Shown piece by piece: positions 9,176 through 9,290 of a DNA stretch of 34,116 nucleotides. The notes beneath the pieces are model-generated. The model searched no databases. It was not told where the DNA came from and was given only the letters and a program-made list of their open reading frames with translations. The stretch covers positions 1 to 34,116 of the forward strand of contig NW_021831886.1 of assembly GCF_006345805.1 (NCBI RefSeq), read 5' to 3'. How positions within the stretch are numbered: position 1 is the first letter of the stretch; every line of letters starts with the position of its first letter. Source of the stretch: Octopus sinensis. Taxonomy: Eukaryota. The position numbers and the translations under genes were made by a program.

Positions 9176-9290
9176 CTGCATATGTAAAAGGGGCTCCGGA
9201 CCACCATCCAAGGATATCGATGAAAATGTAGAGTAGTGTGTGAGCAAAAGGAAAGCGAAACAAGCGTTGACCAAGATGAAGGACAGAGAC
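9176..9290 (-). CDS. HGSNAT: HGSNAT-like gene, penultimate exon (115 nt as assembled, contains a 2-nt CA insertion): SLSFILVNACFAFLLLT / LLYIFIDILGWWSGAPFTYA-G
   Basis: ttttgtgcag acceptor and gtcagt donor (9175-9170). Two overlapping frames each match HGSNAT (SLS.. and ..D..GWW.G.PF.Y.G). Removing one CA from ctcacacacta gives 113 nt and the phase-1 end the last exon needs. Confidence 0.9.

What the first reader, a model, noticed from the sequence alone, without database searches (positions are those of the whole stretch)
9176..9290. 2-nt CA insertion frameshifts the penultimate exon of the HGSNAT-like gene
Seen: the exon is entered in phase 2 and the last exon needs phase 1, which 115 nt does not give. 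The sequence ttg ctc aca CA cta ctc tac has one extra CA in a short (CA)3 run (plus-strand gtgtgtg, 9236-9242). Spliced as is, it reads ...LLTHYSTFSSISLDGGPEPLLHMQD*, losing the last ~80 residues including predicted membrane segments. All splice sites of the four exons are intact. A second GT 4 nt downstream (gtca|gtagac) would restore the last exon's frame but scramble about 20 residues. Known: HGSNAT loss blocks lysosomal heparan sulfate degradation (MPS IIIC in humans), and A-to-I editing cannot repair an indel. Inference: a consensus error, a segregating null allele, or a very young pseudogene paralogue.
Basis: partly seen in the sequence, partly recalled or inferred. Interest (0 to 1): 0.7.

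Follow-up and report, generated by a model that had tools for sequence, protein, structure and literature searches.

The report
Two-base frameshift in HGSNAT-like exon
One exon of an otherwise intact lysosomal acetyltransferase (HGSNAT-like) gene carries two extra bases that break the reading frame; nothing else in the gene has decayed, so this is either an assembly error or a very recent null allele, which is an ordinary finding.

Summary
The window holds the last four exons of an HGSNAT-like gene on the minus strand: 23783-23709, 15222-15152, 9290-9176 and 7642-7467. All splice sites are canonical. The penultimate exon is 115 nt. The orthologous exon in a related contig (L001) is 113 nt, and the other three exon lengths are identical (75/71/176). 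The DNA alignment puts the 2-nt gap at the CACACAC run (9236-9242).

With one CA removed, the peptide aligns without gaps to human HGSNAT (E 3e-33) and to 105 homologues. It keeps all 16 strongly conserved residues downstream of the shift.

As written, the product ends ...LLHMQD*. It loses 78 residues that correspond to helices TM10 and TM11 and to the human disease residues D562 and P571, so it would be a null.

The lesion is single and there is no decay after it, so it is either not biological or very young. No reads or same-species sequence were available in any collection, so I could not separate these readings:
- consensus error, about 0.45
- real null allele, about 0.35
- young duplicate pseudogene, about 0.1

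Interest is low.

The parts
23709..23783 (-). Exon A of the HGSNAT-like gene in the window. It is 75 nt, phase 0 to 0, and encodes AGRIIVQYPSHKERIFRWTVYTIAT.
   Evidence: tblastn with Haliotis P0003 residues 496-522. Boundaries are ctgcag|GCG...ACG|gtaaag. The L001 orthologous exon is also 75 nt.
15152..15222 (-). Exon B. It is 71 nt, ends in phase 2 (TG|), and encodes GAISAALCLTSVNDGVIPINKNL(W).
   Evidence: The motif IPxNKNLW is conserved in 86-99% of 105 homologues. The L001 exon is also 71 nt.
9176..9290 (-). Exon C, the penultimate exon. It is 115 nt and frameshifted. Frame 1 encodes SLSFILVNACFAFLLLT and then frame 0 encodes LLYIFIDILGWWSGAPFTYA(G).
   Evidence: The orthologous L001 exon is 113 nt with the same cag|GTC start and G|GTCAGT donor.
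9236..9242 (-). The CACACAC run (GTGTGTG on the plus strand) that holds the extra CA. Removing one CA gives CTC ACA CTA CTC TAC, which reads L T L L Y.
   Evidence: The DNA alignment with L001 places its 2-nt gap here.
9170..9175 (-). Two donor sites. The canonical donor GT is at 9175-9174 (CAG|gtcagt, the same hexamer as in L001). The alternative GT is at 9171-9170 (GTCA|gtagac) and would put the last exon back in frame.
7467..7642 (-). Exon D, the last exon. It is 176 nt including the TGA at 7469-7467 and encodes (G)LNSIVLYCGHNV...AYILFRKKIFISL*. An AATAAA follows within about 10 nt of the stop.
   Evidence: The L001 exon is also 176 nt.
7637..7639 (-). The premature TGA reached when the sequence is spliced as written (GAT TGA, D*). 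It is the second codon of the last exon.
8992..9153 (.). An imperfect (TA)n array with 8% indels, 23 nt downstream of exon C in the intron.
   Evidence: Together with 9379-9507 it leaves only about 225 nt of unique sequence around the exon. Long-read consensus calling and short-read polishing are difficult in that setting (inference).
9379..9507 (.). An imperfect (AT)n array with 9% indels, 89 nt upstream of exon C in the intron.

Best explanation
The locus is the 3' end of a functional, intron-containing HGSNAT orthologue. [quoted passage not shown] The extra CA in the CACACAC run of the penultimate exon is a one-unit slippage-type indel that has left no evolutionary trace. The most likely origin is the sequence consensus, that is an assembly or polishing error in a short unique island between two long AT-dinucleotide arrays, and not the animal's germline. 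The real transcript would then carry a 113-nt exon and encode ...LLLTLLYIFIDILGWWSGAPFTYAGLNSIV...KKIFISL.

Shown here: the exon structure, the position and size of the shift, the lack of any other damage, and that the as-written product would lack TM10 and TM11. Inferred: that the indel arose in the consensus and not in the germline.
For: 1. There is a single lesion. The four exons have canonical acceptors and donors, and their lengths are 75/71/115/176 against 75/71/113/176 in the orthologous contig L001.
2. With one CA removed, the peptide aligns gap-free to human HGSNAT 543-661 (E 2.8e-33) and to 105 homologues, with no gap columns from NKNLWS to G-x-N.
3. All 16 columns conserved in at least 80% of homologues downstream of the shift are still encoded in the shifted frame: Y, D, W, G, P, F, G, N, I, Y, H, F, P, H, L, W.
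4. Identity to relatives does not drop after the shift: L001 60.6% before and 59.7% after, Haliotis 63.6% and 53.2%, Owenia 43.1% and 53.8%.
5. The window has no N and spans SSR arrays up to 800 bp, so it most likely comes from a long-read assembly. The exon lies 23 nt and 89 nt from (TA)n arrays that themselves carry 8-9% indels.
6. From general knowledge: a strongly conserved enzyme whose loss causes recessive disease is expected to carry null alleles only at low frequency. Residual indels, by contrast, are the main error type in long-read consensus sequence.
Against: No reads, transcripts or second assembly of this species could be examined, so the origin of the indel was not observed. A run of 3.5 CA units is short for a systematic sequencing error; such errors usually affect homopolymers and long microsatellites. 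The other 322 nt of coding sequence in the window show no error. The genome is extremely rich in dinucleotide repeats, so true replication slippage may also be common. The indel-to-substitution ratio among repeat copies in the window (129 gap openings to 564 mismatches) is somewhat high but does not settle the question.
Confidence: 0.45

Rival explanations
1. The extra CA is a real germline null allele at the functional locus. It arose by replication slippage and is either heterozygous or segregating in the population, or was fixed very recently. The mRNA would be spliced normally and translated to ...LLHMQD*. The stop lies in the last exon, so by the vertebrate exon-junction rule the transcript would probably escape nonsense-mediated decay (inference). 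The protein would lack TM10, which is part of the catalytic core lining the acetyl-CoA site, and TM11, and it would be inactive or misfolded.
For: The sequence as given carries it. One-unit slippage in a short dinucleotide run is the classic origin of small germline indels, and this genome is very rich in CA/TG and TA repeats. The absence of further decay fits a young allele as well as it fits an error. The lost segment contains the equivalents of human D562 and P571, whose missense changes give misfolded, inactive enzyme (PMC2757673). TM10 belongs to the catalytic core and TM11 to the scaffold domain (PMC11357348). The allele would therefore be a recessive null that can be carried in heterozygotes.
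Against: A null allele of a conserved enzyme should be rare, so finding it on the one assembled haplotype is unlikely beforehand. There is no population or read data. Nothing in the window separates this reading from a consensus error.
Confidence: 0.35
2. The window holds a very young duplicated, intron-containing pseudogene copy of HGSNAT, and an intact paralogue lies elsewhere in the genome.
For: HGSNAT-like genes are numerous in invertebrates: 893 representatives at E<=1e-3, many of them annotated '-like'. A redundant copy would tolerate a frameshift. The related contig L001 shows local duplication activity, with four tandem copies of the acceptor plus the first roughly 40 nt of the last exon.
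Against: Only one lesion is present, the splice sites are intact, and all conserved residues are retained. Introns lie at the same positions as in L001, so it is not a processed copy. There is no sign of a duplication boundary in the window, and no second copy could be searched for.
Confidence: 0.1
3. The frameshift is real and is bypassed functionally. This could happen through the alternative donor 4 nt downstream (exon end at 9172), giving an in-frame protein with 23 rewritten residues, or through ribosomal frameshifting at the CA run.
For: The +4 donor does restore the last exon's frame...LLHMQVR-LNSIVLYCGH...KKIFISL*.
Against: The rewritten segment (HYSTFSSISLDGGPEPLLHMQVR, mean hydropathy -0.25) replaces a hydrophobic, highly conserved segment (LLYIFIDILGWWSGAPFTYAG, +1.04), including the near-invariant D, W, G, P, F and G. 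GTAGAC is a weak donor: it lacks G at +5 and the exonic AG. The canonical GTCAGT is conserved in L001. There is no X XXY YYZ slippery heptamer in CTT TTG CTC ACA CAC TAC. A -1 shift would add a residue that none of the 105 homologues has.
Confidence: 0.03

Closest known systems
Human HGSNAT (heparan-alpha-glucosaminide N-acetyltransferase; PDB 8VKJ, 8JKV, 8TU9)
   Same: The conceptual C-terminus, with one CA removed, aligns gap-free to residues 543-661 (E 2.8e-33). It shares the IPxNKNLWS motif, the D562 and P571 equivalents, the G-x-N kink region of TM10 and the C-terminal RKKIF.
   Different: As written, the window's gene is frameshifted after the residue equivalent to human L583 (663-residue numbering) and would lack TM10-TM11. 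Only the last four exons are in the window, so the catalytic His and the luminal domain cannot be assessed.
Haliotis rufescens XP_048247315 'heparan-alpha-glucosaminide N-acetyltransferase-like' (P0003) and the orthologous metagenome-derived contig L001 (ENA ERZ21930224 ctg37119l)
   Same: These are the closest relatives found: 59% identity over 118 residues for Haliotis and about 60% for L001. L001 has the same four exons with the same phases and lengths of 75/71/176 nt.
   Different: Their penultimate exon or segment is in a single frame. It is 113 nt in L001 against 115 nt here.
Truncating and C-terminal missense HGSNAT alleles of mucopolysaccharidosis IIIC (for example D562V and P571L)
   Same: If the lesion is real, it removes the region in which these human mutations cause misfolding and loss of activity (PMC2757673; PMC11357348). 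It would be a recessive null of the same type.
   Different: It occurs in an unidentified invertebrate, probably a mollusc or other lophotrochozoan judging from the best hits. No phenotype or zygosity is known, and it may not exist outside the assembly.

Membership tests
HGSNAT / TNAT-fold lysosomal N-acetyltransferase | Significant collinear sequence similarity to the TM9-TM11 region of characterised HGSNAT | tested here: met
   E 2.8e-33 to human HGSNAT chains in the PDB. There are 455 representatives at E<=1e-10. The best hit is annotated HGSNAT-like in Haliotis.
HGSNAT / TNAT-fold lysosomal N-acetyltransferase | Family-conserved residues of the C-terminal region (IPxNKNLWS, D, W-G-PF, G-x-N, Y-GH, FP, H, W) | tested here: met
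   All 30 columns conserved in at least 80% of 105 homologues are matched, 14 upstream and 16 downstream of the shift. The downstream ones match only in the shifted frame.
HGSNAT / TNAT-fold lysosomal N-acetyltransferase | Catalytic His (H269, isoform 2 numbering) and the N258 / TM2-5 acetyl-CoA site | not testable with these tools
   The exons that encode them lie upstream of 23783 and were not found within the window. No other sequence of this species is available.
HGSNAT / TNAT-fold lysosomal N-acetyltransferase | Uninterrupted reading frame through TM10 and TM11 | tested here: not met
   The 115-nt exon shifts the frame, and the product ends ...LLHMQD*.
Decayed (old) pseudogene | Several disabling lesions, lost splice sites, or relaxed conservation after the first lesion | tested here: not met
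   There is one lesion only. All splice sites are canonical. There is no conservation drop and no stop in the 78 downstream codons.
Processed (retrotransposed) pseudogene | Absence of introns | tested here: not met
   Three introns of about 8.5, 5.9 and 1.5 kb sit at the same positions and phases as in L001.
Duplicated young pseudogene | A second, intact copy elsewhere in the same genome | not testable with these tools
   No genome or reads of the species are present in any collection.
Programmed ribosomal frameshift site | A slippery heptamer at the shift point, and homologues sharing the shift | tested here: not met
   There is no X XXY YYZ in CTT TTG CTC ACA CAC TAC. All 105 homologues and L001 are in a single frame.

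The most novel reading that the evidence does not exclude
The extra CA is real and fixed in this species. The animal would then have no canonical HGSNAT C-terminus (TM10-TM11). It would either rely on a paralogue or another route for heparan sulfate turnover, or use the +4 donor to make an enzyme with a rewritten TM9-TM10 linker.
Probability: 0.05. Interest if true: 0.4.

Novelty: new member of a known kind. Interest (0 to 1): 0.13.

Why it matters
It matters little beyond annotation quality. If the indel is an error, it is a reminder that exons lying between microsatellite arrays in long-read assemblies need read-level checking before a gene loss is called, and the gene model should be flagged or corrected. 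If it is real, it is a naturally occurring recessive null of a lysosomal enzyme in an invertebrate. That would be the counterpart of human MPS IIIC truncations, but with no obvious new biology.

Tried and rejected
- **Same-species sequence.** I looked for sequence that could stand in for reads. Two word-index protein searches, one with the repaired and one with the as-is peptide, found only distant proteins. An exact DNA pattern allowing (CA)2 or (CA)3 found 0 hits in metagenome contigs. A protein-guided scan of metagenome contigs found no relative.
- **Pfam.** A scan of the C-terminal peptide and of four other ORFs gave no family. The PDB search and the representative search made the family assignment instead.
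- **Organism identity.** I tried to identify the organism through a transposon-like ORF. Only distant Helitron-like hits came back and no taxon emerged. The literature search for HGSNAT plus cephalopod gave nothing relevant.
- **Assembly indel rate.** I tried to estimate it from repeat copies within the window. The result, 129 gap openings to 564 mismatches over 7.9 kb, was inconclusive because the copies contain microsatellites.
- **RNA genes.** Rfam and tRNA scans found nothing.
- **1-nt deletion instead of a 2-nt insertion.** Rejected: it would imply an extra residue that none of the 105 homologues has.
- **Alternative acceptors.** Rejected for exon C and exon D: no AG lies in the required position.
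- **Skipping exon C.** Rejected: phase 2 joined to phase 1 is still out of frame.
- **Ribosomal frameshifting.** Rejected: there is no slippery site.

Full report
**What is in the sequence**

The window is an AT-rich, microsatellite-laden stretch of animal DNA without any N. Its minus strand carries the last four exons of an HGSNAT-like gene:

| Exon | Coordinates | Length | Notes |
|---|---|---|---|
| A | 23783-23709 | 75 nt | phase 0 to 0 |
| B | 15222-15152 | 71 nt | ends TG\|, phase 2 |
| C | 9290-9176 | 115 nt | frameshifted |
| D | 7642-7467 | 176 nt | includes the TGA stop |

All acceptors are pyrimidine tract plus AG. The donors are gtaaag, gtaagt and gtcagt. No further upstream exon was detectable in the window.

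**Checking the observation**

Exon C is entered with one base still needed to finish the Trp codon. The remaining 114 nt make 38 codons, so the exon ends in phase 0. Exon D begins GA TTG AAC and needs one base from the exon before it.

Spliced as written, the product reads ...NKNLWSLSFILVNACFAFLLLTHYSTFSSISLDGGPEPLLHMQD*, with the stop at 7639-7637. The first 17 codons of exon C are HGSNAT-like in one frame. The last 21 are HGSNAT-like in the frame displaced by two bases (LLYIFIDILGWWSGAPFTYAG). The switch lies in CTCACACACTAC, where the CACACAC run occupies 9242-9236.

**Size and direction of the lesion**

A related contig from a public metagenome assembly (L001, ENA ERZ21930224) carries the orthologous gene. 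Its exon lengths are 75, 71, 113 and 176 nt, with the same phases and the same cag|GTC start and G|GTCAGT donor for exon C. The DNA alignment places a 2-nt gap in L001 on the CA run.

With one CA removed, the window's peptide aligns without a gap to human HGSNAT residues 543-661 (E 2.8e-33). In an alignment with 105 homologues of at least 400 residues there is no gapped column between NKNLWS and G-x-N. A 1-nt deletion would require an extra residue that no homologue has, so the lesion is a 2-nt insertion of one CA unit.

**Age of the lesion**

Downstream of the shift there are 78 codons without a stop in the displaced frame. They encode every one of the 16 columns that are conserved in at least 80% of the homologues: Y, D, W, G, P, F, G, N, I, Y, H, F, P, H, L, W. 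Identity to relatives is the same before and after the shift:

| Relative | Before the shift | After the shift |
|---|---|---|
| L001 | 60.6% | 59.7% |
| Haliotis | 63.6% | 53.2% |
| Owenia | 43.1% | 53.8% |

There is no second lesion, and no splice site is damaged. An old pseudogene is excluded. A processed pseudogene is also excluded, because the introns sit where they sit in L001. The extra CA is either not biological or evolutionarily very recent.

**What the as-written product would be**

By alignment, the last correctly encoded residue corresponds to human L583 in 663-residue numbering (L555 in the 635-residue numbering used in the literature). The lost part contains:
- the equivalents of D562 and P571, whose missense mutations in MPS IIIC patients give misfolded, ER-retained, inactive enzyme (PMC2757673);
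- the P575-G576 kink of TM10;
- TM10 itself, which with TM2-5 forms the catalytic core enclosing the acetyl-CoA site;
- TM11, which belongs to the scaffold domain (PMC11357348).

The as-written tail is hydrophilic (mean hydropathy -0.41, against +1.04 for the native segment). A real allele of this kind would be a null. Because the stop lies in the last exon, the message would probably not be removed by junction-dependent nonsense-mediated decay. This last point is an inference from the vertebrate rule.

**Possible rescues**

- The GT 4 nt downstream (exon end at 9172) restores the frame of exon D. It replaces 21 conserved residues with 23 unrelated ones. It is also a weak donor (gtagac), whereas the canonical gtcagt is conserved in L001.
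- No AG is positioned to give a compensating acceptor in exon C or D.
- Skipping exon C joins phase 2 to phase 1, which is out of frame.
- There is no slippery heptamer for ribosomal frameshifting.

I consider functional rescue very unlikely.

**Error or allele?**

This could not be decided. No protein or DNA of the same or a closely related species exists in the collections available.

Two pieces of indirect evidence lean towards a consensus error. First, the window spans very long microsatellites without gaps, so it most likely comes from a long-read assembly. Second, exon C sits in about 225 nt of unique sequence between two imperfect (TA)n arrays of 162 and 129 nt that themselves contain 8-9% indels. 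Consensus calling and short-read polishing are weakest in such places. In addition, a null allele of a conserved enzyme is expected to be rare.

Other points weigh against an error. A 3.5-unit CA run is short for a systematic sequencing error. The other 322 coding nucleotides are clean. A genome this rich in dinucleotide repeats may also have a high true slippage rate.

My estimates are:
- consensus error, 0.45
- real young null allele at the functional locus, 0.35
- young duplicated pseudogene, 0.10
- functional bypass, 0.03
- the remainder is unassigned

**Comparison with what is known, and verdict**

The gene is a member of the HGSNAT family by sequence. The closest named relative is Haliotis rufescens HGSNAT-like at 59% identity, which suggests a mollusc or other lophotrochozoan source. 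That attribution is an inference. The catalytic His region lies outside the window and was not tested.

The lesion is an ordinary one-unit slippage indel. Interest is low. The useful outcome is a flag on the gene model and a simple read-mapping test.

Noticed in passing
window 33380-33967 (-): A 196-aa open frame with a CCxGGKV-type motif. Its database relatives are 36-54% identical and include one protein with Pfam PF14214 (Helitron_like_N), so it is probably a Helitron-type transposon remnant upstream of the HGSNAT exons. Pfam itself gave no hit for the ORF.
   Followed up: partly
window 5190-5769, 6141-6778, 6987-7286, 20441-21316, 29714-30583 (also shorter pieces at 26803-26973): An interspersed repeat of about 550-880 bp is present at least five times in both orientations at 87-98% identity. 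One nearly identical inverted pair lies just downstream of the gene (6413-6709 versus 6988-7282, 97.6%). Each copy carries a short ORF (MCLVYPYQTGSHDGYTGLRIFYP...) followed by an (AAT)n run. The family was not identified.
   Followed up: no
window 8490-8661: A 172-bp perfect-type palindrome that matches its own reverse complement at 90.8%. It lies in the last intron and looks like a MITE or foldback element.
   Followed up: no
window 10160-10959, 7838-8073, 12776-13149, 11926-12431: The introns hold very large tandem arrays: (TATG)n of 800 bp, (ATAG)59, (TG)n-derived 374 bp, and a 116-bp unit repeated 4.3 times. The SSR density of the whole window is unusually high.
   Followed up: no
window 2188-2745 (+) and 5608-5997 (+): Two ORFs share a ...LIDV/ITVP.D.NV....KL.KYKDLEIE..RMW.LKT..IP...GALG... 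tail, which resembles the C-terminal part of retroelement ORFs. Pfam gave no hit for 2188-2745; 5608-5997 was not scanned.
   Followed up: partly
window 16890-17531 (-): There are open frames with an acidic, Ser-rich stretch and a Cys-rich end (..CTICKAKEKLKETRYHRSQ..). I suspected a piggyBac-like transposase remnant. Pfam gave no hit, so this remains unsupported.
   Followed up: partly
L001 6797-7035: In the related contig, the acceptor plus the first roughly 40 nt of the last HGSNAT exon (gcag|GCATGAACAGCAT...) is tandemly repeated four times, with starts at 6797, 6911, 6968 and 7023, before the real exon. These could act as decoy or alternative acceptors. The window has no such repeat.
   Followed up: no
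L001 6951-7442 (protein P0002): The database protein for this contig reads through the gene's TGA stop as W (...KKIFVALWTECQ...). It appears to be a prokaryote-style gene call with an alternative code on eukaryotic DNA. Its extra 90 residues are an artefact.
   Followed up: partly
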